From the sequence record LC727698.1: a DNA stretch of 64,000 bases; one strand, written 5' to 3'. Below are positions 1 through 32,638 of this stretch, in pieces. The position numbers and the translations under genes were made by a program. Each line of letters opens with the position of its first letter. The first letter of the stretch is position 1. The notes beneath the pieces are model-generated. The model was given only the letters and a program-made list of their open reading frames with translations, made no database searches and was not told the DNA's origin.

Positions 1-2964
1 AATATAGTATATTTGCAAGTAAATGATGATCAGCAATTAGTTGTTACTCATCCTATGTATGCAACTGAATGGTCTACAATAGGTGGGCTTAGAGTAACGG
101 GTGATCAATCTAAATTCGATGGATCATTAGAAGTTGGATATGAATTGCTAGTAGGACAAACATCTACCTTTAACAACGACATGGTAGTAAACGGTTTAGT
201 TACAGTAAATAGAGATTCTCTAGATGCAATGCTCATTCACGGGAATGTTACATTACATGGCAACTTAACTGTAGTAGGTAGCAGCTCAGGGACTACACCC
301 GGGCAAGTAACTATTTCCGACAACATTATGGTCGTGAATACAGATGACGTAGGTCCGGGCGTCACTGCAACATATTCTGGTTTTGAAGTCCAGCGTGGAA
401 TTCCCGTAGGCGAAACTAATAGTCACGGTGAACCTGGCCAAGGTAAATTGCCTTCTGCTGGATTAGTTTGGAATGAAGTGCAAAAATCCTGGGATCTTAA
501 TTATAACCCTATTCTTTCTGAAAAATTACCACAAAATCCTAGAATAATTAACTTAGGGCAGCCAGTTGCTGACAACGATGCTTCTACAAAAAAATATGTG
601 AATGATAGCATAACTGCTGCACTTGACGATGATATTTATTTAGATAGACTTACTGATGTAACAATTTCTTCTCCGGCTAATAAAAATATACTACAGTACG
701 ATTCTTCTACATCGCAGTGGAGAAATTTACCATATTCGTTTATACGATTAACGGATGTAACTGGTGTATCTGTCCCGAGAGGATATGTAAGATGGAATGC
801 AGCAGGAACACAGTTAGTATATGAAACCACTATAGATTATGCACAGTTAACTGGATTGTCTGATGTAGCTAAAGCAGGACAAGGGGCTCTAAGTTTTCTT
901 AGTGATGTAACGTTATCATCGTTATCTAATACACAGGCATTATTTTATAATGGAACCTCTTGGGTTAATAGACTAATTAATTACTCCGACATTCAAAATA
1001 CTCCTACTAACAATTCGTATAGTTTTATTGGATTAAATGATACAAATAATACAGTTGTTAATAACGGATATGTAAGATGGAATGCAGCAGGAACACAGTT
1101 AGTATATGAAACCACTATAGATTATGCACAGTTAACTGGATTGTCTGATGTAGCTAAAGCAGGACAAGGATCGTTAGATTATTTAACAGATGTTAGTATA
1201 GGAACTGCTAGCTCTGGTAATGTACTAAGATATAACGGAACTGATTGGGTAAACCAAGTATTATCATATACTGATCTTTCTAATACCCCTACTAACAATT
1301 CGTATAGTTTTATTGGGTTAAATGATACTAATGATACTGCACTTTCGGGTGGTTATTTACGATGGAATCCCACCGGAACACAGATAGTATATCAATCCAC
1401 TATAGATTATGCACAGTTAACTGGGTTATCTTCTGTTGCTAAAGCAGGACAAGGGGCTCTAAGTTTTCTTAGTGATGTAACTATATCGTCACCTGGCGCT
1501 AGTAATACATTGCGATACGATACTACTTCATCTAAATGGGTAAACACTAGACTTGCTTATTCCGATTTAACAGGTCAACCAACCTCTGCTAATTATCAAC
1601 TAGTTGGGTTAAGCGATACTGCAAGCACATCTGTACCATTGGGATATCTTAGATGGAACGCCGCTGGAACTCAAGTAACATATGCTACTACGATAGATAT
1701 ATCAGTTATATCTGGTAAATCTACTGTAGCTTCTGCTGGTTCAGCAACACTATCTAATCTAGAAGATGCTGCTGTTACAACGCCTGCTGCTGGGAATACT
1801 TTAATATGGAATGCGTCTACAAATAAATGGACAAACGGCATATTGGATGTATCTAATATTACTAATGCTGTACCTGTTAGTAGAACAGTATCTGCAGGAA
1901 CTGGTCTATCTGGCGGAGGAAATTTATCTAGTAATATTACGTTGTCGGTTAATAGAACATTAACTGATACATGGTATGCTGCTGCATCACATACACATGA
2001 TGCATCTAATATTACGTCTGGTGTTATTGCGAATGCTAGACTGCCAGTTGGAAGCACAACAGCACAAGGTATTTTACAGTTAACAGATGGTGTTGCTAGC
2101 ACATCTACAACTACTGCCGCTACACCTAATTCGGTAAAAACTGCATATGACTTAGCAACGACAAAAGCTAATATATCACATACTCATGATGCATCTAATA
2201 TTACTACTGGTACTATTGCTGTAGCCAGACTTCCGGTTTCGTCTACTACTGCACAAGGTATAGTTCAGCTTACTGACGGTGTTGCCAGCACATCTACAAC
2301 TACTGCTGCTACGCCTAATTCAGTGAAAACTGCATATGATTTAGCAACGACAAAAGCTAATGCTTCTCACACCCATGATGCATCTAATATTACGTCTGGT
2401 GTTATTGCGAATGCTAGATTACCGTTTGCCTCGACTACTGTATATGGTATAGTAACTCTGTTAGATTCAGTTGCCAGTACGTCTATATCTACTGCTGCTA
2501 CACCTAATTCGGTAAAAACTGCATATGACTTAGCAACGACAAAAGCTAATATATCACATACACATACTCCTGCTCAAGTAGGTTTATCGAATATTTCTAA
2601 TAACGGAAATACTATAACGGGAAATACAACTATATCTGGTGCATTGTCGGTAACAGGAAATGCTGTTTTTAATACATCTGATATAAAATTAAAAGATAAT
2701 ATACAGCCTATTAAAAATCCAGTAGAACTTCTTAGCAAAATTTCAGGATATACCTATACTAGAAATGATTGTAATAACGAAAAACAAACCGGTATTATTG
2801 CGCAGGAAGTTGAAACGATACAACCTGAAAGTGTAAGAGAAGTAGACGGTATAAAAACTGTAAACCATAATGGAATAATTGCACTGTTAGTTAGTGCAGT
2901 TAATGAACTTTCTAAAGAAATAGAAGAATTAAAACAACAACTTTCTTACAAAAAAAGGGACTAA
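1..2964 (+). CDS. Tail fibre protein with internal repeats and C-terminal intramolecular chaperone (Peptidase S74-like); 5' end lies outside the window
   Basis: Frame is open from base 1. Four ~95-aa repeats, three 63-aa tail-fibre repeats (TAQGIVQLTDGVASTSTTTAATPNSVKTAYDLA), and a C-terminal SDIKLKDNI...GIIAQEV...coiled-coil chaperone motif. Confidence 0.88.
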   Translation, partial: NIVYLQVNDDQQLVVTHPMYATEWSTIGGLRVTGDQSKFDGSLEVGYELLVGQTSTFNNDMVVNGLVTVNRDSLDAMLIHGNVTLHGNLTVVGSSSGTTPGQVTISDNIMVVNTDDVGPGVTATYSGFEVQRGIPVGETNSHGEPGQGKLPSAGLVWNEVQKSWDLNYNPILSEKLPQNPRIINLGQPVADNDASTKKYVNDSITAALDDDIYLDRLTDVTISSPANKNILQYDSSTSQWRNLPYSFIRLTDVTGVSVPRGYVRWNAAGTQLVYETTIDYAQLTGLSDVAKAGQGALSFLSDVTLSSLSNTQALFYNGTSWVNRLINYSDIQNTPTNNSYSFIGLNDTNNTVVNNGYVRWNAAGTQLVYETTIDYAQLTGLSDVAKAGQGSLDYLTDVSIGTASSGNVLRYNGTDWVNQVLSYTDLSNTPTNNSYSFIGLNDTNDTALSGGYLRWNPTGTQIVYQSTIDYAQLTGLSSVAKAGQGALSFLSDVTISSPGASNTLRYDTTSSKWVNTRLAYSDLTGQPTSANYQLVGLSDTASTSVPLGYLRWNAAGTQVTYATTIDISVISGKSTVASAGSATLSNLEDAAVTTPAAGNTLIWNASTNKWTNGILDVSNITNAVPVSRTVSAGTGLSGGGNLSSNITLSVNRTLTDTWYAAASHTHDASNITSGVIANARLPVGSTTAQGILQLTDGVASTSTTTAATPNSVKTAYDLATTKANISHTHDASNITTGTIAVARLPVSSTTAQGIVQLTDGVASTSTTTAATPNSVKTAYDLATTKANASHTHDASNITSGVIANARLPFASTTVYGIVTLLDSVASTSISTAATPNSVKTAYDLATTKANISHTHTPAQVGLSNISNNGNTITGNTTISGALSVTGNAVFNTSDIKLKDNIQPIKNPVELLSKISGYTYTRNDCNNEKQTGIIAQEVETIQPESVREVDGIKTVNHNGIIALLVSAVNELSKEIEELKQQLSYKKRD
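781..1740 (+). repeat. In-frame ~285-bp tandem repeat, 4 units
   Basis: GY(V/L)RWN motif starts at 781, 1066, 1351 and 1642; 781-884 and 1066-1169 are identical. Confidence 0.9.
1990..2565 (+). repeat. In-frame 189-bp tandem repeat, 3 units (phage tail-fibre repeat)
   Basis: GATGCATCTAAT recurs at 1999, 2188 and 2377 (period 189 nt = 63 aa). Confidence 0.9.
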
Positions 2965-2980
2965 CCTAAGTCCCTTTTTT
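2950..2980. terminator. Bidirectional intrinsic terminator between convergent genes
   Basis: AAAAAAAGGGAC-TAACCTAA-GTCCCTTTTTT; both convergent stop codons lie at the loop. Confidence 0.85.
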
Positions 2981-3569
2981 CTGAAATTCCTAATAGCATT
3001 AAGCTAAAATCATTTAAGCAGTATTCTAGTTTATCTCTTATTTTATTTAATTCTTTTATATTTTTATTAAAATATTTGTAATCTTTATTATATTTTGATT
3101 TAAAAACACATATTTTATTTAAATCGCAGTTTATATCTGAAATTACAGATAATAAAAAATATTCTGTATAGAATGTGGATATAATCCACGATGTTTTTAG
3201 AGTAACTAAATCAGACAACAATGCTGCCTGTAACTCTTGATGTATACTATAAACGGGATTTATATTCTTTTTATAATTAGCAAGTATGGCAGGGTATTTA
3301 TATTTAGATGTTTCTGTTTCTAGCGTGTTATATAATGTACATAATTCTGAATCGAATTTTATAGTTTCGTTATAATAATTTAACGCAATTTTAGTTGCTA
3401 TATCTAATTCTAATTTTTTATATAATTCTTTTGTGCAAAGATTTTTTATATTAGAATTAATACCTTTATTATTATATAATTCTTTGTTTATTATACCGGT
3501 TTTATTATATATGTTTAAATATTTTTTATATTTAAATTCAATTAAATTAGTTACTTCATTGTGTACCAT
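2961..3569 (-). CDS. Hypothetical protein (202 aa)
   Basis: Long ORF starting 2 nt after the Nudix stop; no motif recognised. Confidence 0.7.
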   Translation of the reverse strand: MVHNEVTNLIEFKYKKYLNIYNKTGIINKELYNNKGINSNIKNLCTKELYKKLELDIATKIALNYYNETIKFDSELCTLYNTLETETSKYKYPAILANYKKNINPVYSIHQELQAALLSDLVTLKTSWIISTFYTEYFLLSVISDINCDLNKICVFKSKYNKDYKYFNKNIKELNKIRDKLEYCLNDFSLMLLGISEKRDLG

Positions 3570-6514: not shown

Positions 6515-6543
6515 AAAAAAGCAACCTTAGGTTGCTTTTTTTT
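6515..6543. terminator. Intrinsic terminator; the 3-nt loop is the stop codon of the minus-strand gene
   Basis: AAAAAAGCAACC-TTA-GGTTGCTTTTTTTT. Confidence 0.8.
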
Positions 6544-7024
6544 CTCTTTGCTTTTTTCTTAAATCGTTGTATTTTTTTTCATAATTAACCGATAGTTCGG
6601 GGAATTCTATTTTTAATAAATCTTGTGCTTTTTTTATTTTAGAAAAATCTATTTTTTCTGGTAAGTCTCGTAAAATATCTTTATCTTTTTCTATAATAGA
6701 TAATATATCGGGGTTAGTTATGTACTTAACTGCTTCTCTGTCGAGGGAAGCCAAAACCATATTTCTTTCAGTTCTTATATTTTTTAATGTTTTATTTGCA
6801 GCAGAATCTAAATCTATTACTACTTTAGTTGGATTTTGTATTTTATCAAATTTTAATGAATCGAAAAATTGTTGTTCTAAAGTGTCGGGAAGTTTATCGT
6901 ATATAACATATTGGGTATTTTCGTTAAATATACCTAGCGTATATAATTCTTCTGTAGATTTGTCTGTTATTAATTTAGCAACCCTTGTTTCGTCGATAGG
7001 GTTTGTATAAAAGATGGTTTTCAT
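6527..7024 (-). CDS. Probable tail fibre assembly chaperone
   Basis: IRTERNMVLASLD...DILRDLP motif typical of tail-assembly chaperones; lies directly downstream of three fibre genes. Confidence 0.6.
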   Translation of the reverse strand: MKTIFYTNPIDETRVAKLITDKSTEELYTLGIFNENTQYVIYDKLPDTLEQQFFDSLKFDKIQNPTKVVIDLDSAANKTLKNIRTERNMVLASLDREAVKYITNPDILSIIEKDKDILRDLPEKIDFSKIKKAQDLLKIEFPELSVNYEKKYNDLRKKQREKKAT

Positions 7025-13327: not shown

Positions 13328-13747
13328 GTGATAATAATGATAGAAACTATTTTAACCTCGAGAGTATTTGCTTATGCAGTTTGCATAGGTATAATATCGT
13401 TAGCAATAACGCTCTCATATCAAAAATATCAAAAGCTTATTAGTGTAAATAAATCTCTTGAACAATCTATAGAAACGTTAACTAATGATAATAATTCATT
13501 GCAGTTAACTATTTCTGAACAAAATAAAAAGATTGAAACATATATTCAACTTAGATTATATGAAGAATCTATAGCCAAACAAAAAGCAGAATCACATGCT
13601 GCTTTAGAAAAACAATTACAAGATACTAAATCTCAGTTAAATGAATTAATAGAACGTAGAAAGAATGAGGCACCAAATGATCAAAGTGTGTTATGCTCTA
13701 CTGTCAGGATTGATCCTGCTTTACGCAACTGGATGCTCGCAAACTAA
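13328..13747 (+). CDS. Inner-membrane spanin (i-spanin, Rz-like)
   Basis: Single N-terminal TM helix followed by a long coiled coil; overlaps a lipoprotein gene. Confidence 0.8.
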   Translation: MIIMIETILTSRVFAYAVCIGIISLAITLSYQKYQKLISVNKSLEQSIETLTNDNNSLQLTISEQNKKIETYIQLRLYEESIAKQKAESHAALEKQLQDTKSQLNELIERRKNEAPNDQSVLCSTVRIDPALRNWMLAN

Positions 13748-13994
13748 ACCAGTTAAGTCTGTAGTGATAGAAAAGGAAATAGTTCCTGTTCTTCCGCCAG
13801 ATTCTCTTATAGTATATTGTTACGAAAATGAAAATCCCGATACGTATGGCGAAGCGGTAGGTTCGGTTAAAAAACTAAAATCTATAATTAAAAATTCTTG
13901 TAATAAAAATATGAAAGATATAGAACTTTGGAAATCTGAAGTTAAAAAACTATATCCTACTGCGAATGACTTAGAAACAAAAAAGCAGCCTTAA
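13677..13994 (+). CDS. Outer-membrane lipoprotein spanin (o-spanin, Rz1-like)
   Basis: GAGG SD before ATG 13677; signal peptide with lipobox LYATG-C; Pro-rich segment VPVLPP; overlaps the i-spanin 3' end. Confidence 0.8.
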   Translation: MIKVCYALLSGLILLYATGCSQTKPVKSVVIEKEIVPVLPPDSLIVYCYENENPDTYGEAVGSVKKLKSIIKNSCNKNMKDIELWKSEVKKLYPTANDLETKKQP

Positions 13995-22618: not shown

Positions 22619-24640
22619 ATGAAAAATTATTTGTTAACTGTACCTGTCAATTCTAATGTAGATTATACTAAACTAGATATACACGATTTTGTTCCTGCAA
22701 TAAAAGAATTAACAACTAGATTATTTTATAACACAGGTGTAACACTTCAAAAAGAAACTATTTTGTTTAATGATTTGGTAGTATCCGAAGATGCTAGTCG
22801 ATTAGCATTTATTAATAGCATTTTGCATAATCTATTGAATACCTGCTCTACTACTGAGTTAGAAAATATTGCAGATGAGTGTGATACTATTTGCACAGAA
22901 TACTATAATAATTCTAGAATCGCATATTCTGAAAGAGAATACAATGCATATAAAAATATAAAAAATAATGAATCTTATTTTTCAAGTCTAAAATATTATG
23001 AACAAAAATATGTGATTGATGCCATAGAATATTACGAAGAAGAATCTGATATTAATTTCTCGCATGATACAAAAATATACCTATCATCTTTATATTCAAA
23101 ACTTAATAAAGCACAGCAGAATTTTTCTAATAATATAATAAAACATACTGCAAAAAACAGGTATTACTTTGAACACGATTTCCAAGTTGAAGGTATACCA
23201 GATAACATAAAAGATATAATGCGGGAGAATGCAAGGGCAGACGGTCATGAATCTGGATATGTAGCTACAACTGAACACTACATCTACACAGCTATAATGC
23301 AATATTGTTCGTACGAGTATACTAGAAAAACAATGTTAGAAGCTTTTTATGTAGCTAGTAACGGCGAATATAGCAATACAACTAATATAACAGATATTGT
23401 ATCTATTAAATCCGAAATAGCAAAATTGTTTGGGTTTAGTACGTTTGCAGAAAAATCATTAAAGCATAAAATGGCAAAAACACCCGATAATGTATTTTCT
23501 GTATTAAATAAATTGAAAGACTTAGTAGTAGATAAAGCATTAGAAGAAGAAAAAGAACTTTTAACTTTCGCTAAATCTAAAGGATACCAACGACCTTCTG
23601 TCCGCGCCGCTGACAGAAATTATTATTCTACTATGAGATTAAAAGAAGAATATAATTTAGACAAAAAGGTTATAGAAGAGTATTATACATATGCCGGTGT
23701 TCTTCCTTGTATATATGGTGTTATAAAAAAACTTTTTGATGTTACATTTGTAGAAGACCCTAATGCATCTGTGTGGCATGAAGATGTTAAATGCTATAAG
23801 GTATTCGAAGATAGCAAGCATATTGCATATATTTTTATAGATCCGTTTTCTAGGAACGGAAAACAATCCGGGGCATGGATGAATGGTATTATTAAAAGGG
23901 ATTTTGCTTATAATACTACTCTACCGGTTGCAGTAATAGTGACTAATCTGTCAAAAACATCTATTACGTTAGATGATGTACGTACACTCTTGCATGAATT
24001 TGGTCATGCATTACACCATGTACTTACTAAAGTAGAATTTCCTAATTATAATGGAATTTCTGTAGAATGGGATGCAGTAGAATTGCCGAGCCAGTTATTG
24101 GAAAATTGGATTAATGATAAAGAGCTTTTAATTGAAATGTCGTCTCATTATTCTACAAAAGAAAAAATTCCAGAATATATAATTGATAACTGGTTGGCTA
24201 TAGATAATTATATGGCTGCGTCTTCGTTAAGAACACAGTTATTATATTCATTAGTAGATATGAAAATTTTTAATAGCAATGCAAAGACAGATAAAGATTG
24301 TATAGAAATTTTTAATGAAGTAGCAAAAGATTTAAAATTAAACACAGAAGATAATCCGTTTATGCATTTGTTTTTATATTCGTTTTCTCATATATTTTCC
24401 GGAGGATATACAGCAGGTTATTATAGCTATTTGTGGGCAGAAATTATGTCAAGTGATGTTTATTTAGAATTTAAAAATAAAGGAATATATAATATAGAAT
24501 TTGCTAATAAAATTAAAAAAGATATTCTATATGCAGGTTCTATTAATGACTTTGATGTAATGTATAGAACATTAATGGGTAGAGATCCTGACCCAGAATC
24601 TCTGCTAATAGTTAGGGGATTGCAGAATAGCAAAAAATAA
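22619..24640 (+). CDS. prlC: Oligopeptidase A-like M3 metallopeptidase
   Basis: 673 aa; GKQSGAWM, TLLHEFGHALHH (HExxH), WDAVELPSQLLENW, FSHIFSGGYTAGYYSYLWAE, GRDP..E.LL. Confidence 0.92.
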   Translation: MKNYLLTVPVNSNVDYTKLDIHDFVPAIKELTTRLFYNTGVTLQKETILFNDLVVSEDASRLAFINSILHNLLNTCSTTELENIADECDTICTEYYNNSRIAYSEREYNAYKNIKNNESYFSSLKYYEQKYVIDAIEYYEEESDINFSHDTKIYLSSLYSKLNKAQQNFSNNIIKHTAKNRYYFEHDFQVEGIPDNIKDIMRENARADGHESGYVATTEHYIYTAIMQYCSYEYTRKTMLEAFYVASNGEYSNTTNITDIVSIKSEIAKLFGFSTFAEKSLKHKMAKTPDNVFSVLNKLKDLVVDKALEEEKELLTFAKSKGYQRPSVRAADRNYYSTMRLKEEYNLDKKVIEEYYTYAGVLPCIYGVIKKLFDVTFVEDPNASVWHEDVKCYKVFEDSKHIAYIFIDPFSRNGKQSGAWMNGIIKRDFAYNTTLPVAVIVTNLSKTSITLDDVRTLLHEFGHALHHVLTKVEFPNYNGISVEWDAVELPSQLLENWINDKELLIEMSSHYSTKEKIPEYIIDNWLAIDNYMAASSLRTQLLYSLVDMKIFNSNAKTDKDCIEIFNEVAKDLKLNTEDNPFMHLFLYSFSHIFSGGYTAGYYSYLWAEIMSSDVYLEFKNKGIYNIEFANKIKKDILYAGSINDFDVMYRTLMGRDPDPESLLIVRGLQNSKK

Positions 24641-24731
24641 TAAATTTTGCTACATATATAAAAAGCTATGTAACGCTATGCTATTTGGCTTTTGTTGCAT
24701 TTTATAGCACAAAAACCCCATAAAAATAGCC

Positions 24732-24760
24732 TAGACAAGCAACTGTAAACACTGTATAAT
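24732..24760 (+). promoter_or_regulatory. Sigma70 promoter
   Basis: TAGACA-17 nt-TATAAT. Confidence 0.7.
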
Positions 24761-24787
24761 TGCTTTATTATAGTAAGGGATAAAATA

Positions 24788-25084
24788 ATGAACATTCATT
24801 TATCTTTTAAGGAACAACTTTCTAAGCTAATTGATGAAAACATAAATAAATACCCCGATGCTATAGATTGGATAGTATCTCAAATGGCTTTAATAGATAT
24901 TGAATCTAAAAAGACAAAAGCAGAATCTATTATGGAAGCTCTTATAGGTGATACTGAATTTTTTAATAACCCTATAGAACAGGGTGGAAGTAATAAAGAT
25001 TTTATAGTGTGGTATGTAACTAAATATAATTGTACTACTAAATACGCTATAGAACGGTTACTTCATTATTGTAAACAGAATTAG
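24788..25084 (+). CDS. Hypothetical protein (98 aa)
   Basis: SD AAGGGA; downstream of a sigma70 promoter. Confidence 0.7.
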   Translation: MNIHLSFKEQLSKLIDENINKYPDAIDWIVSQMALIDIESKKTKAESIMEALIGDTEFFNNPIEQGGSNKDFIVWYVTKYNCTTKYAIERLLHYCKQN

Positions 25085-25199
25085 CCCTTAGGACCGCCAA
25101 ATGTTTTGGCTTAAGGCGCACCGGTGCTGCATCGGAGCTTAGTGATTCGCTACCACAAAAGCATAAGCAGCTAGGAGACTTAAAACGTCTCCTATTTTT
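25083..25199 (+). ncRNA. Candidate ~115-nt structured RNA (pseudoknot) ending in an intrinsic terminator
   Basis: GC-rich intergenic segment; hairpins GCCAAA/TTTGGC and CCGGT/ATCGG; loop GCTGC complementary to downstream GCAGC; terminator TAGGAGAC/GTCTCCTA followed by T5. Confidence 0.6.
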
Positions 25200-25220
25200 A
25201 TATATACAGGAGTAAAGTAT

Positions 25221-25412
25221 ATGAATAGCGATTATGCCTCTATGTTTATAGTAATATTTGCCATATTAGTTGTGTTTATTTGTAAACCGACAACATTTAA
25301 TGAGCCTAAAAACACCATCGATACAAACAAAAGCAATGTAGCGAACGACAGTATTCCACTTACAGGAAACATTTCTAGAACACCGGGTATAGGTACAGGT
25401 ATAGGATTATGA
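25221..25412 (+). CDS. Small single-pass membrane protein (63 aa)
   Basis: SD CAGGAG; hydrophobic residues about 7-21. Confidence 0.65.
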   Translation: MNSDYASMFIVIFAILVVFICKPTTFNEPKNTIDTNKSNVANDSIPLTGNISRTPGIGTGIGL

Positions 25413-25636
25413 AAAAGAAAAACCCAATCGAACGCAATCCAGTTGCACATCATGTAAACACATTTAACAAACCTAAAGTAGAAAAAGACAAGACAAAATA
25501 CTCTAGGAAACAAAAACACAGGACTAGGAATAGTCCTGATTTTTTTATGTATAATATATTGACAGATATTGTATTTGGAATATACAATATGCATAACAAG
25601 GAGTGTTATTGTGGCAAAAACGAAACATATTTTTAA
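25409..25636 (+). CDS. Small basic ArfA-like peptide; ORF interrupted by an internal terminator (non-stop product of about 46 aa)
   Basis: NPVAHHVNTFNKPKVEKDKTKYSRKQKH resembles E. coli ArfA [21 protein letters not shown]; terminator at 25519-25546 precedes the stop. Confidence 0.6.
   Translation: MKKKNPIERNPVAHHVNTFNKPKVEKDKTKYSRKQKHRTRNSPDFFMYNILTDIVFGIYNMHNKECYCGKNETYF
25519..25546 (+). terminator. Intrinsic terminator inside a coding frame
   Basis: CAGGACTA-GGAA-TAGTCCTG-A-TTTTTTT (8-bp stem, GNRA loop, T7). Confidence 0.8.
25559..25588 (+). promoter_or_regulatory. Sigma70 promoter
   Basis: TTGACA-18 nt-TACAAT immediately after the internal terminator. Confidence 0.6.
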
Positions 25637-26729
25637 AGTTCCAGATTATTCTCTTTTAAAATTAGATTCTAAGACATATACTAAGGATTATAGGAATGCA
25701 ATTTGGTATTTGCATTATGAAGCATCTGCTGCTACTCTTAAATCTGCAACACTAAAATGGATTAAAAATAATACATCTTATGATGTAAAAGATTTATCTT
25801 CGTTGAGTGATTCTGATTTTTCTATTATCGGAAAATATTGTACTATATTAAATGCCGGCGGACAACTTCCTAGTCATGCTAATTTCGTCGAATCACACAT
25901 AGACAAGATATTTCAATCTATTAAAAAAGAAGAAATTACAGAAATTGTCGAAGAACCAGAACCTAAAATAGAGCATGATAGTTGCAAAGTTAAAAAAATA
26001 AGTATACAGGATAGAATTAAGAGCCAGGCATATAAAGCTTGCGGAGAAATTGAAGGATTAATAGATCAATTTTATAGTAATCCTAGTGAGTTTGTAGTAT
26101 CCCAGCAAGAAATAGAATCCTTATTTAAAAAATCAGAAATAAAATCCCATCATGTAAAATATATTACTGAAATATATAGCACCAATAAAAAAGAATTAGA
26201 GGAGCTTTCGGCAGGAAAATCCGAACAGTTAAACGAAGGTTATAATTTTTTAACTAAACGGGATATAAACAAAGCCATAAAGCTATTTAATTTAATTATA
26301 GAAACTGCGTCTAGTAGTAAAATAATTACTGTTAAAAAACGAGCTAAAAAACAAAAGCCATTGGATATTTCTAAATTAGTTAAATCATTTAAATATTTAG
26401 AAAAAAGCACAGATCTTAACTTAGAAAGTATTAATCCTGTCCATATTGTTGGTGCAAAAGAAGTATGGGTGTTTAATACAAAAAGTAGAAAGTTAGGAAA
26501 ATATATTGCTTTAGACACTACAGGTCTATCAATAAAAGGAACTACTATAACTAATTTTTCTGAAAAAAGTATAGAAAAAACTATTCGTAAACCAGAAGAA
26601 TATTTTAAAAATATTAAGAAAATTTCTAAAAAGGCAAAAGAAAAATTATTTGTAGATACTAAATCTGTCGAAACTAAACTAAAAGGAAGAACAAACGAGC
26701 ATTGTATCATTCTTGAGGTTATAAAATAA
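25611..26729 (+). CDS. Phage hypothetical protein (about 372 aa)
   Basis: GTG start after AAGGAG; C-terminal INP..IVGA.EVWVFNTKSRKLG.Y....GLSIKGTTI motif recalled from T4-like phages; function unknown. Confidence 0.75.
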   Translation: MAKTKHIFKVPDYSLLKLDSKTYTKDYRNAIWYLHYEASAATLKSATLKWIKNNTSYDVKDLSSLSDSDFSIIGKYCTILNAGGQLPSHANFVESHIDKIFQSIKKEEITEIVEEPEPKIEHDSCKVKKISIQDRIKSQAYKACGEIEGLIDQFYSNPSEFVVSQQEIESLFKKSEIKSHHVKYITEIYSTNKKELEELSAGKSEQLNEGYNFLTKRDINKAIKLFNLIIETASSSKIITVKKRAKKQKPLDISKLVKSFKYLEKSTDLNLESINPVHIVGAKEVWVFNTKSRKLGKYIALDTTGLSIKGTTITNFSEKSIEKTIRKPEEYFKNIKKISKKAKEKLFVDTKSVETKLKGRTNEHCIILEVIK

Positions 26730-26764
26730 ATAGTGTTATCTATATATAGAGGCACTTTATAAAA

Positions 26765-27517
26765 ATGGCTACAAGTACAGCAAGAACAGAAATAAAGAAA
26801 CAAATAATGCGAAGACTGGGAAATAGTATGACTGATGTAGAACTAGACCCAGAAGATTTAGATTTAGCAATAGATTTTGCAATAGATAGATACCGCCAGC
26901 GCGCCGAAAATGCTTGCATGGAAAGTATGCTGTTTATAACTCTGCAAAGAGATGAAACTGAATACACTTTACCTACTGAAGTTCAAGAAGTAAGACGACT
27001 ATATCGTAGATCTGTTGGATCGGGAACATCTGGCGGTACTAACTTTGATCCGTTTGAATCTGCATTTTCGAATATATTCTTTTTACAAGCAGGTCGAACC
27101 GGCGGTCTAGCAACATGGCATCTATTTTCCGAATACCAAGAAACCTTAGGAAGAATATTTGGATCTGAAATAAACTTTACATGGAACTATGCAGATAGAA
27201 AACTTACTATCATGCGAAAATTCCAAGGTGCCGAAACAGTATTGGTAGTTGTGTGGGTAGCAAAATCTGAAGATGTGCTTTTGACTGATGTATATAGTAG
27301 ACCGTGGTTAAGAGATTATGCTATTGCCCAGTCTAAATATATGTTAGGTGAAGCACGTAGTAAATTTACTAATGGCTTACCAGGACCGAACGGTAGTGTT
27401 ACTTTAAACGGCGATCAGTTAAAACAAGAAGCATTTGCTGAAATGGAACGTTTAGAAAACGAAATTATAAATTATACAACCGGGACATCGTTTGGTATGC
27501 CATTCATTATTGGATAA
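26765..27517 (+). CDS. gp13: Neck protein, T4 gp13-like
   Basis: EIKKQIMRRLG....DVELDPEDLDLAIDFA matches the gp13 N-terminus ([20 protein letters not shown]); AATAAATA at 26725-26732. Confidence 0.82.
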   Translation: MATSTARTEIKKQIMRRLGNSMTDVELDPEDLDLAIDFAIDRYRQRAENACMESMLFITLQRDETEYTLPTEVQEVRRLYRRSVGSGTSGGTNFDPFESAFSNIFFLQAGRTGGLATWHLFSEYQETLGRIFGSEINFTWNYADRKLTIMRKFQGAETVLVVVWVAKSEDVLLTDVYSRPWLRDYAIAQSKYMLGEARSKFTNGLPGPNGSVTLNGDQLKQEAFAEMERLENEIINYTTGTSFGMPFIIG

Positions 27518-31021: not shown

Positions 31022-32638
31022 ATGTCTATTGTATGTAAAATTTGTAATAAATCATTTCCTAGTATGATTACAAGTACACATCTAAAAACACATAACATCA
31101 CTACTGCAGAATACAAAGATCTTTATGGAAAATATTCTCTTGTATCAGATGAATATAGATCAAAGCGGTCAGAACAGTCATCTGGCATTAATAATCCTAA
31201 TTATGGAAATAAATGGTCAGACAGCATGAAAGAATCTATGTCTAATAAAAAATCTGGAACTATTCCGTGGAATAAAGGCATAGAGTTACACGATACTACT
31301 ATGTATGTGAAATCTGCAGAACAGAGAGAACTAAAGTACAAAGAAGGGATACTAACTAGGAAATCATATGTCAGAACTGTAGAAATAAATAAAAAAATTT
31401 CTGATAGTGTGAAGAAGTATGCTGCAGAAAATAAAGAAGAAGTAAAACAGAGAAGTGCCAAAGCAAAAGATACATATAGTACAAAGAAAACGTTAGGGTT
31501 AGTGCAAATACGAAAAGGATATAAGTTAACCAAATCACATAAAGAAATAGCTATACAAACATTAAATAATTATAGGGCTTCTAAAACAGCAGAATCTAAT
31601 AAACAAGTAGAAAGTAATATATCTCTTGCAAATCTAACATTATTAAATGACATAAACGAAAACAGCTTAGTGTTAAGGTGTAATATATGTAATAATGAAT
31701 GTTCTTTTACAAAACAATATTTTAGAGCTAGTAAATTTAAAATAGAATTATGTCCTGTATGTTATCCTAGAAATAGTAATAGATCTGAAAAAGAAAAAGA
31801 ATTAGAATATTTTATAACAAGTTTAGGTATTTCATGTATAAATTCTGCACGTATAAACAATAAAGAAATAGATATATTTTGTAAAGAATTAAATATTGGA
31901 TTTGAATTTAACGGATTATACTGGCATAGTGAGGATGTTTTAGAGTATTCTGGGTACAGTAAAACAAAAGATTACGAAAAGAAAATATTTTTTAGAGATA
32001 AAGGAATTAGATTAATTCAAATATTTGAAGATGAATGGGACTTAAAACAAGATATAGTAAAGAGTAGAATAAGAGCTATATTAGGAAAAACAGAACACAA
32101 AATATATGCAAGGAAATGTACTATTAAAGAAATAAATTCTAAAGTTGCAAATGATTTTGTAGAAAAAACACATTTACAAGGTAAAGGTAGAGCAAATGTA
32201 AGATTAGGGTTGTATTATAACAATGAACTAGTTTCTGTAATGACATTTTTAAATAAAGATATTACTAATAAAACATCGAGCTGTCAGATAAATCGTTTTA
32301 GTGTAAAACATAATACATCTATCCCCGGCGCCGCGGGAAAATTATTTGCTTACTATATAAACAATTATAATCCATCTAGTGTTATTTCGTATGCAGATTC
32401 TCGCTGGTCTGATGGTAATTTGTATGAACAGCTAGGATTTAAATTAGATAAACAGACACTCCCTAATTACTGGTATATAAAAGATAATGATCTTAAAAGA
32501 TATCATAGATACAATTTTAGAAAAGATAAGTTGCCTGAAACTTTACTAACAGAAAAAGAATATATGGATAGTTTGGGATGGAATAGAATATGGGATTCGG
32601 GATCTACTAAATGGGTTTGGACAAATAAAGGGGCATAA
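31022..32638 (+). mobile_element. Free-standing homing endonuclease gene (Vsr-like/Hef-like nuclease) between sheath and tube
   Basis: N-terminal CKIC...H...H Zn finger; NUMOD-like NNPNYG..W...PWNKG; EIDIF...IGFEFNGLYWHS; GIRLIQIFEDEW; C-terminal SYAD.RWS.GNLY...RIWDSG. Confidence 0.8.

What the first reader, a model, noticed from the sequence alone, without database searches (positions are those of the whole stretch)
25409..25636. Phage ArfA-like ribosome-rescue peptide apparently encoded on a deliberate non-stop mRNA
Seen: a 75-codon ORF whose first 37 residues are very basic (RNPVAHHVNTFNKPKVEKDKTKYSRKQKH). A textbook intrinsic terminator (CAGGACTA-GGAA-TAGTCCTG-A-T7, 25519-25546) lies in frame at codons 37-46 with no stop codon. 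The rest of the ORF runs over the next gene's TTGACA promoter and start, so the likely mRNA ends at ...SPDFF without a stop. Established: bacterial ArfA (E. coli [21 protein letters not shown]) and Bacillus BrfA are made from non-stop mRNAs (RNase III cleavage or internal terminator), so tmRNA destroys them unless trans-translation is saturated. Inference: the phage has a tmRNA-sensing backup rescue factor, or a rescue inhibitor or mimic, that switches on when ribosomes stall, e.g. after host toxin or anti-phage mRNA/tRNA cleavage. The GKGS motif of ArfA is missing, so homology and mechanism are uncertain.
Basis: partly seen in the sequence, partly recalled or inferred. Interest (0 to 1): 0.9.

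Follow-up and report, generated by a model that had tools for sequence, protein, structure and literature searches.

The report
Phage ArfA-like non-stop rescue peptide
A giant Pseudomonas phage carries a tiny, very basic gene that is a distant, so far unrecognised relative of the bacterial ribosome-rescue factor ArfA and, like ArfA, has a transcription terminator inside its reading frame, so it is probably made only when the cell's main ribosome-rescue system is overloaded.

Summary
The window is Pseudomonas jumbo phage 30-3, a PA5oct-like Wroclawvirus. ORF 25409-25636 is a real gene that scores 58-60 bits against Pfam DUF7230 (cut-off 27). A strong intrinsic terminator (stem 25519-25538, U-tract 25540-25546) lies in frame with no stop before it. 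The 75-codon length is specific to this isolate. Nine related genomes have T6 instead of T7, giving 50 codons, but their stop still lies 13 nt beyond the U-tract.

DUF7230 is homologous to ArfA:
- One phage protein (J2-1) passes both Pfam models.
- Other phage ArfAs have DUF7230-like N-termini.
- Profile-profile probability is 68-94% once the ArfA set is diverse.

The non-stop design recurs. All nine other long-tailed members whose DNA I fetched, from phage-like contigs and bacterial chromosomes such as Methylomonas, carry unrelated strong hairpins or terminators starting 7 nt before to 15 nt after the conserved KH codon. Most phage homologues have ordinary stops.

My best reading is a tmRNA-gated, ArfA-type backup rescue factor. 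The homology and gene architecture are shown here. The mRNA 3' end, SsrA tagging and release-factor recruitment are inferred.

It is a new variant of a known kind.

The parts
25409..25546 (+). Predicted functional coding part: codons 1-46 (MKKKNPIERNPVAHHVNTFNKPKVEKDKTKYSRKQKHRTRNSPDFF), running up to the end of the U-tract where the mRNA is expected to end without a stop
   Evidence: Pfam DUF7230 59.9 bits, E=2.6e-16. Identical in 10 genomes apart from 2 synonymous sites.
25409..25636 (+). Annotated 75-codon ORF of this isolate (RVBP17_1010). The part beyond 25546 is not conserved as protein; it is in another frame in all relatives.
25436..25519 (+). Conserved DUF7230/ArfA-superfamily core, residues N10-H37 (NPVAHHVNTFNKPKVEKDKTKYSRKQKH). 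The basic tail VEKDKTKYSRKQKH aligns to ArfA [17 protein letters not shown].
25519..25538 (+). Terminator hairpin: 8-bp stem with a GGAA loop, encoding codons 37-43 (H R T R N S P)
   Evidence: -12.9 kcal/mol, z -3.77. Invariant in 10 genomes.
25540..25546 (+). U-tract: T7 here, T6 in the nine other Wroclawvirus genomes. This 1-nt difference switches the downstream frame.
25560..25562 (+). TGA that serves as the stop codon in the T6 relatives. It is out of frame in this isolate and lies inside the TTGACA hexamer, 13 nt beyond the U-tract.
25559..25588 (+). Sigma-70-like promoter (TTGACA-N18-TACAAT, 11/12) for the next gene (GTG 25611)
   Evidence: PA5oct uses host RNA polymerase, and its promoters carry TTGAC and TATAATA motifs (PMC7318152).
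25221..25412 (+). Upstream 63-aa predicted membrane protein whose stop overlaps the ATG (ATGA). It is probably co-transcribed and translationally coupled.
25172..25200 (+). Upstream terminator-like hairpin plus T-run that marks the 5' side of the two-gene unit
25611..26729 (+). Next gene (372 aa, phrog_11903, function unknown). It starts a block with the head-tail adaptor, dNMP kinase and tail sheath.

Best explanation
The gene encodes a 45-46-residue member of an ArfA superfamily (Pfam DUF7230, a sister family of ArfA).

Shown here:
- The peptide's basic C-terminal tail (VEKDKTKYSRKQKH...) is homologous to the ArfA tail. [quoted passage not shown]
- The gene carries a canonical intrinsic terminator inside its reading frame, directly after the last conserved codon and before any stop.
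- The same layout recurs, with unrelated hairpins, in many other DUF7230 genes of phages and bacteria, and in bona fide arfA genes.

Inferred:
- The phage uses host RNA polymerase, which ends most transcripts in the U-tract at about 25545-25547.
- Ribosomes translating the gene therefore run to the mRNA end.
- While host tmRNA-SmpB has spare capacity, the nascent peptide is SsrA-tagged and degraded.
- When trans-translation is saturated, the untagged peptide is released and accumulates. Saturation could come from phage-driven mRNA decay or from host nucleases that cut mRNA or tRNA.
- The free peptide binds non-stop ribosomes through its tail. Its conserved N-terminal part (RNPVA...FNKP) recruits a class-I release factor to hydrolyse peptidyl-tRNA. 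This frees ribosomes for phage protein synthesis.

The T7/T6 polymorphism is neutral under this model, because nothing beyond the U-tract is translated from terminated mRNA.
For: Identity.
- The window is 100% identical to Pseudomonas phage 30-3 and 98.8-99.5% identical to PA5oct-like phages.
- The ORF scores 58-60 bits against Pfam DUF7230, cut-off 27.

Homology to ArfA.
- J2-1 ATN93434 scores 41.3 bits on ArfA (cut-off 25.5) and 28.6 bits on DUF7230 (cut-off 27), on overlapping residues.
- BLASTP of the window peptide against J2-1 gives 12/20 identities, E=3e-7.
- Pseudoalteromonas chromosomal ArfA hits DUF7230 at E=0.0098.
- Phage ArfAs with RNPxA-type N-termini pass PF03889.
- hhalign of 171 DUF7230 sequences against 13-14 diverse ArfAs gives 68% (P=5e-5) without J2-1 and 92% (P=6.5e-7) with it. 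The bacterial-type DUF7230 subgroup gives 92-94%.
- That alignment places the predicted non-stop end (F45/F46) opposite E. coli ArfA residues 53/54. Mature ArfA is 52-55 aa (PMC6299226).

Architecture.
- The terminator is confirmed and invariant in 10 genomes.
- It is the only strong terminator in the window that lies wholly before its gene's stop, against 0 of 13 others.
- All ten long-tailed members whose DNA I fetched have a strong hairpin or terminator starting 7 nt before to 15 nt after the KH codon, with the stop 21-95 nt beyond the stem: the Wroclawvirus gene itself (21 nt in the T6 genomes, 95 nt here), L035 and L173-L180.
- These include the Methylomonas methanica chromosomal gene next to gidA/gidB/parAB.
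- MFE z-scores of the 75 nt after KH have a median of -2.5 for all 14 long-tail loci scored, which include three long-tailed members without a hairpin (L079, L086, L039). The median is +0.49 for the 47 short-tail loci scored.
- Of 123 family proteins, 45 have tails of 13 or more residues, typically hydrophobic and unconserved.
- arfA genes of E. coli, Proteus, Pasteurella, Vibrio and Neisseria show the same geometry.

Precedent.
- In-ORF terminators make arfA and brfA non-stop mRNAs and put them under tmRNA control (PMC6299226; PMC6881298).
- PA5oct depends on host RNA polymerase (PMC7318152).
Against: - No transcript 3' ends, tagging or activity data exist for this gene or for any DUF7230 member. 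A library search for 'DUF7230' found 0 papers.
- A closely coupled ribosome could suppress an in-ORF terminator. Read-through mRNA would then carry the stop (TGA in T6 genomes) and give a 50-aa product.
- Most phage homologues have ordinary stops 3-12 codons after KH and no hairpin: 47 of the 65 loci scored have short tails, and 78 of 123 family proteins do. The PAK_P1 group is an example. tmRNA gating is therefore not required for the family's function in phages.
- The KGKGS motif is replaced by DKTK, a three-residue deletion. ArfA A18, whose A18T change (from my own knowledge of the ArfA literature) blocks RF2 activation, aligns to a non-conserved H/K. The N-terminal halves align only weakly.
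- The Pfam ArfA model does not detect this peptide or any of 59 family members. A profile search of PDB sequences does not reach ArfA.
- With enterobacterial ArfAs only, hhalign gives just 13-17%.
- In some marine viral contigs the module sits inside 336-667-aa proteins. That does not fit a free C-terminal tail.
- P. aeruginosa already has its own ArfA.
Confidence: 0.6

Rival explanations
1. Ordinary small basic phage protein of some other function, such as general nucleic-acid binding. The terminator merely overlaps the dispensable 3' end because the phage genome is compact. Functional mRNA is read-through or translation-protected transcript that carries the stop. There is no tmRNA link.
For: - This phage often packs terminators onto gene ends, with stops inside hairpins.
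- Most phage homologues have normal stops.
- Some homologues are modules of large proteins.
- In the T6 genomes a stop lies only 13 nt past the U-tract.
Against: - Homology of the tail to the ribosome-binding tail of ArfA.
- In the window, no other strong terminator lies wholly before its stop.
- At least ten independent lineages, including bacterial chromosomal genes with long RNase III-type hairpins, place an unrelated hairpin at the same codon position. Compaction does not predict this.
- The frame after the U-tract is free to change between T7 and T6.
Confidence: 0.2
2. [quoted passage not shown] It would act as an inhibitor or modulator of host rescue (tmRNA-SmpB, ArfA, ArfB) or as a ribosome-parking factor.
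For: - The tail is ArfA-like, but the N-terminal half diverges from ArfA's N-terminal half, which contacts RF2 (residues 15-31; PMC6299226).
- The position aligned to ArfA A18 is not conserved.
- The KGKGS motif is missing.
Against: - Close relatives are stand-alone chromosomal genes in bacteria with the ArfA-type non-stop design. That design makes sense for a backup rescue factor, not for an inhibitor.
- The N-terminal motif RNPxA...F is shared with phage proteins that pass the ArfA model.
Confidence: 0.12
3. Artefact or decaying gene. The long ORF is a frameshifted pseudogene or a homopolymer sequencing error, and nothing unusual is encoded.
For: T7 is found only in this isolate, against T6 in nine other genomes. 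Homopolymer length errors are common.
Against: - The unusual feature, a terminator before the stop, is present in the T6 genomes too.
- The conserved coding part is intact, and the only substitutions among relatives are synonymous.
- The Pfam match is strong.
Confidence: 0.03

Closest known systems
ArfA (alternative ribosome-rescue factor A, Pfam PF03889) of Gamma- and Betaproteobacteria
   Same: - Small size, with a predicted mature peptide of 45-46 aa against 52-55 aa for ArfA.
- A homologous basic tail, V-E-K-x-K...Y-x-R-K-x-K-H.
- A hairpin or terminator inside the ORF directly after that tail, so that the mRNA lacks a stop.
- An unconserved, often hydrophobic ORF remainder.
- Several ArfAs (Vibrio ...RKAKHRGKEPY) share even the post-KH segment with bacterial DUF7230 (...RKAKHKGKEPF).
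   Different: - KGKGS is replaced by DKTK, three residues shorter.
- The N-terminal half is RNPVAK...FNKP instead of DNAL.AL...LFR.
- The position aligned to A18 is not conserved.
- The peptide is not detected by the Pfam ArfA model.
- It is encoded by a virulent jumbo phage.
- Its hairpin is a short 8-bp terminator rather than a long RNase III substrate.
Phage-encoded ArfA (PF03889) already annotated in phage genomes: Pseudoalteromonas phage J2-1, Citromicrobium phage RXM g10, Brevundimonas phage Bambus, pelagiphage HTVC027P gp30
   Same: - Phage genes of the same superfamily.
- J2-1 has the same DKTKY-RK-KHK tail.
- RXM and Bambus have the same RNPxA N-terminus.
- RXM also has an in-ORF hairpin (PMC8953757; PMC12753301).
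   Different: - Those proteins pass the ArfA model and are named ArfA. The Wroclawvirus gene and about 440 other phage records are 'hypothetical protein'.
- J2-1 has an ordinary stop.
- None has been tested functionally, as far as the library search shows.
BrfA (Bacillus subtilis YqkK)
   Same: A rho-independent terminator inside the coding region produces a non-stop mRNA. The product is SsrA-tagged and accumulates only when trans-translation fails. BrfA is a small RF2-dependent rescue factor with a C-terminal part in the mRNA channel (PMC6881298).
   Different: There is no sequence similarity. BrfA is an independent invention in Gram-positive bacteria. No BrfA-type family appears in the Pfam scan.
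ArfT (Francisella tularensis)
   Same: A 40-aa basic rescue factor that recruits a release factor (PMC6299226).
   Different: It has a different motif (KKGGSTNKK) and no in-ORF terminator or RNase III site. It is unrelated by sequence.
Pfam DUF7230 (PF23876), phrog_6310/1359/2701
   Same: The gene is a full member at 58-60 bits. The family has 1162 proteins at E<=1e-3 in the large protein collection. tblastn finds 444 phage records at E<=0.01, mostly Vibrio and Pseudomonas phages.
   Different: The family carries no functional annotation. Its link to ArfA and its bimodal gene architecture (ordinary stop versus in-ORF hairpin) are not recorded in the family names seen here.

Membership tests
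DUF7230 (PF23876) | Match to the Pfam model above the gathering score | tested here: met
   58.2 and 59.9 bits against a cut-off of 27; residues 8-41 match profile positions 3-36 of 42. All 59 aligned relatives also match.
ArfA (PF03889) | Match to the Pfam or NCBIfam ArfA model | tested here: not met
   No hit at E<=10 in Pfam or NCBIfam. None of 59 family members hits PF03889.
ArfA (PF03889) | Demonstrable homology by profile-profile comparison or intermediate sequences | tested here: met
   J2-1 passes both models. hhalign gives 68-94% with diverse ArfAs. BLASTP against J2-1 gives E=3e-7.
ArfA (PF03889) | KGKGS motif in the tail | tested here: not met
   The tail reads EKDKTKYSRK. The alignment needs a 3-residue gap opposite KKG. 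J2-1, which passes the ArfA model, also lacks the motif.
ArfA (PF03889) | Basic C-terminal tail Y-x-R-K-x-K-H following V-E-K | tested here: met
   VEKDKTKYSRKQKH against [17 protein letters not shown]
ArfA (PF03889) | Hairpin, terminator or RNase III site inside the ORF before the stop, giving a non-stop mRNA | tested here: met
   At the DNA level: the terminator at 25519-25546 precedes the stop in all 10 genomes. Control arfA genes show the same geometry. The RNA 3' end itself was not observed.
ArfA (PF03889) | Residues that activate RF2 (region 15-31, A18) | tested here: inconclusive
   The aligned region is conserved within DUF7230 but differs from ArfA, and A18 aligns to H14. The alignment in this half has low confidence.
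ArfA (PF03889) | RF2-dependent peptidyl-tRNA hydrolysis on non-stop ribosomes; synthetic lethality or complementation with ssrA; SsrA tagging of the product | not testable with these tools
   This needs bench work.
BrfA | Sequence relationship to B. subtilis BrfA/YqkK | tested here: not met
   No such family appears among the Pfam hits at E<=10. Only the regulatory design is shared (PMC6881298).
ArfT | KKGGSTNKK-type tail, ordinary stop | tested here: not met
   The motif is absent from the peptide. arfT has no in-ORF terminator (PMC6299226).

The most novel reading that the evidence does not exclude
DUF7230 is a distinct, widespread branch of release-factor-dependent rescue factors, possibly with its own release-factor specificity. 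Hundreds of virulent phages of Pseudomonas and Vibrio, including jumbo phages, would deploy it to keep ribosomes free when infection or host defence nucleases flood the cell with truncated mRNAs. In the Wroclawvirus, Munch-like and some other phages it has kept or re-invented a tmRNA-sensing switch. That would make it a phage-encoded sensor of translational stress and a potential counter-defence against defences that cut mRNA or tRNA.
Probability: 0.3. Interest if true: 0.85.

Novelty: new variant of a known kind. Interest (0 to 1): 0.7.

Why it matters
Three unrelated release-factor-dependent rescue factors have been characterised: ArfA, ArfT and BrfA.

- **New annotation.** This work ties a large family of unknown function to ArfA. 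That family has 1162 proteins in the collection searched and appears in about 440 deposited phage genomes. It also gives the bacterial members (Methylomonas and others) a testable role as their backup rescue factor.
- **Non-stop design is wider than thought.** The design is used well beyond the ArfA-model genes and BrfA, virulent phages included. Phage biologists gain a concrete hypothesis: phages sense and relieve saturation of trans-translation.
- **Natural sequence variation.** Structural work gains DKTK versus KGKGS and a different N-terminus as probes of what ArfA-type factors need in order to bind the mRNA channel and activate a release factor.
- **Annotation practice.** The long ORFs called for these genes are artefacts of reading past an in-ORF terminator.

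Tried and rejected
- **Direct sequence searches.** Pfam and NCBIfam ArfA models, PDB phmmer and a PDB profile search found no ArfA link. hhalign against enterobacterial ArfAs only stayed at 13-17%. I would have rejected homology had I stopped there.
- **Genome-contig scan.** I spent the single scan on ArfA, and it returned only Enterobacteriaceae at 81% identity or more. They served only as positive controls. Diverse ArfAs came from tblastn against plasmids and phages instead.
- **First word-indexed protein search.** It found only the protein itself.
- **Exhaustive representative search.** It gave 18 hits. Two of them (P0007, P0013) are eukaryotic repeat proteins and chance matches.
- **The search for related loci with the broad alignment.** It failed because no stretch was conserved enough. 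A narrower alignment worked.
- **Programmed frameshifting onto the out-of-frame TAGs.** There is no X XXY YYZ slippery heptamer in frame upstream (read). The idea was dropped.
- **An indel in relatives that puts a TAG in frame.** None exists; the sequence upstream of the U-tract is the same in all genomes.
- **ArfT or KGG-repeat relationship.** The motif is different (PMC6514570).
- **PA5oct supplementary terminator and promoter tables.** They are not held in the library.
- **Rfam and tRNA scans around the gene.** Nothing relevant turned up.
- **Cluster look-up for source organisms.** All ten clusters looked up come from ENA, JGI/IMG or Logan assemblies with no organism named.
- **Weak DUF6291 hits.** Thirteen of 59 members hit it, best E 0.0065. 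I did not pursue this.
Full report
**What the window is.** A 2.1-kb stretch around the finding (window 24700-26800) is 100% identical to Pseudomonas phage sp. 30-3 (LC727698). It is 98.8-99.5% identical to ten other records of the jumbo-phage genus Wroclawvirus, among them PA5oct, MIJ3, 30-2, Callisto, Ettore, Paride, Deifobo, Cassandra and PAC2. All of these annotate the gene as a hypothetical protein. [quoted passage not shown] Host-type intrinsic terminators are therefore relevant signals in this phage.

**The observation.**
- The ORF runs from ATG 25409 to TAA 25634-25636, 75 codons.
- The hairpin CAGGACTA-GGAA-TAGTCCTG is at 25519-25538. It is followed by A and T7 (25540-25546) and lies in frame at codons 37-46 with no stop codon. 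Both TAG triplets in the hairpin are out of frame.
- An independent scan calls it terminator-like. It folds at -12.9 kcal/mol, z = -3.77, and none of 200 shuffles folds as well.
- Directly downstream come TTGACA-N18-TACAAT (25559-25588), an AAGGAG ribosome-binding site, and the GTG start of the next gene at 25611.
- The upstream 63-codon membrane-protein gene overlaps the start (ATGA). That two-gene unit is preceded by another terminator at 25172-25194.

**One correction.**
- Nine other Wroclawvirus genomes differ here only by having T6 instead of T7.
- Their ORF is 50 codons (...NSPDFLCIIY*), ending at the TGA inside TTGACA (window 25560-25562).
- The 75-codon ORF is therefore an isolate-specific homopolymer difference, either real or a sequencing error.
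- In every genome the hairpin and U-tract still come before the stop, with 13 nt between the U-tract and TGA.
- The only other differences inside the conserved coding part are two synonymous changes.

**Is the placement unusual?** I scanned all 72 annotated CDS ends in the window. Thirteen other genes have a strong terminator at their end. In every one, the stop lies before or inside the hairpin; this phage often puts the stop in the loop. Only two weak, doubtful hairpins lie before a stop. The terminator of this gene is the only strong one placed wholly upstream of its stop.

**What the protein is.**
- The peptide matches Pfam DUF7230 (PF23876) at 58-60 bits against a cut-off of 27, over residues 8-41. 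It also matches phrog_6310.
- It does not match the ArfA models of Pfam or NCBIfam, nor any PDB chain.
- An exhaustive HMMER search and a profile search define a family with the consensus RNPVAKxxxxFNKPxVxRDKTKYxRKxKHK.
- The family has 1162 proteins at E<=1e-3.
- tblastn finds 444 phage records at E<=0.01: 306 Vibrio phages and 136 Pseudomonas phages, the latter including the PAK_P1 group and the Wroclawviruses.
- The jumbo Salmonella, Klebsiella and Erwinia phages of the Munch type are also members.

**Homology to ArfA.**
- With E. coli-like ArfAs only, hhalign gave 13-17% probability, P about 0.002, restricted to Y-x-RK-x-KH.
- tblastn with E. coli ArfA against plasmid and phage records supplied diverse ArfAs: Proteus, Pasteurella, Photobacterium, Pseudoalteromonas, Vibrio, Neisseria, Aeromonas and P. 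aeruginosa. It also supplied several phage-encoded ones.
- The Pseudoalteromonas phage J2-1 protein is MRTANDHDHGRGKTKDNKLKQIVTSDLFRTRVERDKTKYRRKKKHKNREEG. Its N-terminal half is ArfA-type and its tail is DUF7230-type.
- J2-1 passes both Pfam gathering thresholds on overlapping residues: ArfA 41.3 bits (cut-off 25.5) and DUF7230 28.6 bits (cut-off 27).
- J2-1 aligns to the window peptide with 12/20 identities, E = 3e-7.
- Conversely, the phage ArfAs of Bambus, RXM and RsoM2USA pass the ArfA model but have DUF7230-like N-termini: KRNPAAAAL..., QRNPLAGTL..., KNVVAKDL....
- Vibrio ArfA (...RKAKHRGKEPY) and bacterial DUF7230 (...RKAKHKGKEPF) share even the segment after KH.
- With 13-14 diverse ArfAs, hhalign gives 68% (P = 5e-5) for the whole family without J2-1, 92% with it, and 92-94% for the bacterial-type subgroup.
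- I conclude that DUF7230 and ArfA form one superfamily. The KKGKGS segment is replaced by DKTK, three residues shorter.
- In that alignment the predicted non-stop end of the phage peptide (F45/F46) falls opposite ArfA residues 53/54, the mature end of ArfA at 52-55 aa (PMC6299226).
- ArfA A18 aligns to a non-conserved position. The mode of release-factor recruitment therefore cannot be inferred.

**Is the non-stop design conserved?** The family is bimodal.
- Of 123 proteins, 78 end 3-12 residues after KH. The other 45 have tails of 13-53 residues that are unconserved and often hydrophobic.
- I obtained DNA for nine long-tailed members besides the window's own gene (ten with it). All of them have a strong hairpin starting 7 nt before to 15 nt after the KH codon, with the stop 21-95 nt beyond the stem (21 nt in the T6 Wroclawvirus genomes).
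- Terminator type, with a U-tract: the Wroclawviruses, L035, L173, L174, L175, L176 and L178.
- Long RNase III-type hairpins without a U-tract: the chromosomal genes L177 (Methylomonas methanica, next to gidA-gidB-parAB and ribA), L179 and L180.
- The hairpin sequences are unrelated to one another.
- In the Munch-type jumbo phages the stop abuts a 4-U tract after a conserved hairpin. The Munch record itself annotates a terminator inside the CDS.
- The 75 nt after KH fold with a median z of -2.5 relative to the same loci in the 14 long-tail loci scored. Three of those (L079, L086, L039) have long but hydrophilic tails and no hairpin. The median is +0.49 in the 47 short-tail loci scored.
- Control arfA genes show exactly this geometry.
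- Most phage members, the PAK_P1 group included, have ordinary stops and sit inside operons.
- In a few marine viral contigs the module is embedded in proteins of 336-667 residues. I cannot explain this.

**How it most likely works.**
- Shown: homology of the tail to the ArfA tail, the in-frame terminator, and its recurrence across the superfamily.
- Established elsewhere: arfA and brfA are made from non-stop mRNAs because of an in-ORF terminator or RNase III site. [quoted passage not shown] Their C-terminal parts occupy the empty mRNA channel while they recruit RF2 (PMC6299226, PMC6881298).
- Inferred for the phage: transcripts end in the U-tract. The 45-46-aa product is tagged and destroyed while tmRNA has spare capacity. 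It accumulates when non-stop complexes pile up during infection, and then frees ribosomes with the help of a release factor.
- The T7/T6 frame switch beyond the U-tract is what one expects if that part is not translated from the functional mRNA.
- I put this explanation at 0.6.

**Rivals.**
- The terminator overlap is incidental and the protein has another function (0.2).
- The peptide is an ArfA mimic that blocks rescue rather than promoting it (0.12).
- The feature is an artefact or pseudogene (0.03). This is essentially excluded by the T6 genomes.

**Comparison with what is known, and novelty.**
- Phage genes that pass the ArfA model are already annotated and have been mentioned in genome papers: RXM g10 (PMC8953757) and pelagiphage HTVC027P gp30 (PMC12753301). 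A phage ArfA as such is therefore not new.
- As far as the databases and the paper library searched here show, three things are new. The first is that DUF7230 belongs with ArfA. The library holds no paper with 'DUF7230', and NCBI names bacterial members 'DUF7230 family protein'. The second is that its bacterial and some phage members keep the non-stop design. The third is that a virulent jumbo phage of P. aeruginosa carries such a switch.
- I class it as a new variant of a known kind, with interest 0.7.

Noticed in passing
window 25083-25202 (+): A G+C-rich, structured intergenic segment in an A+T-rich genome. It ends in a terminator (25172-25194 plus a T-run) and lies between the 98-aa gene and the two-gene unit. 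It folds at -36 kcal/mol, z -2.1. It has no Rfam match and is not among the four ncRNAs listed for PA5oct. It could be a small RNA or a processed leader.
   Followed up: partly
window, CDS ends e.g. 2961-3569(-), 6527-7024(-), 13677-13994(+), 31022-32638(+): In this phage the stop codon of many genes lies inside the terminator hairpin. The stop starts 11-16 nt before the stem end. This is a very compact gene-end design.
   Followed up: partly
L028 442-2445; L071 307-2268; L089 1228-2238; L045 1456-1902 (marine viral contigs): The DUF7230 module is embedded in large mosaic proteins. In L028 it follows a nucleotidyltransferase-like part and a P-loop kinase-like part, and precedes a CWKGY...PNCVP module. 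These look like multi-module phage proteins. How an ArfA-like tail would act there is unexplained.
   Followed up: partly
L189 (Pseudomonas phage pf16), L191 (Ralstonia phage RsoM2USA), L194 374-541 (Vibrio phage 70E35.5a): ArfA-superfamily ORFs are unannotated in the deposited records. In pf16 and RsoM2USA a CDS is annotated on the opposite strand instead. In 70E35.5a the stretch is left as intergenic.
   Followed up: partly
Salmonella phage Arash OQ632216.1 57961-58074 (hit H75): A stretch 63% identical to E. coli ArfA residues 4-41 (E=4e-9) lies under a feature annotated 'ribosomal protein L2'. This is probably a mis-annotation.
   Followed up: no
L179 4511-8243: A bacterial chromosomal DUF7230 gene sits directly upstream of a JetA-JetB-JetC (Wadjet) defence operon. 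This is probably coincidental.
   Followed up: no
window 22619-24640 (+): The phage encodes a 673-aa oligopeptidase A (prlC) homologue two genes upstream. A peptide-degrading enzyme is an unusual gene for a phage.
   Followed up: no
L184, L183 (Pseudoalteromonas and Photobacterium arfA): In these bona fide arfA genes the stop codon lies in the loop of the terminator hairpin rather than beyond it. ArfA genes too vary in whether the terminated mRNA would contain the stop.
   Followed up: partly
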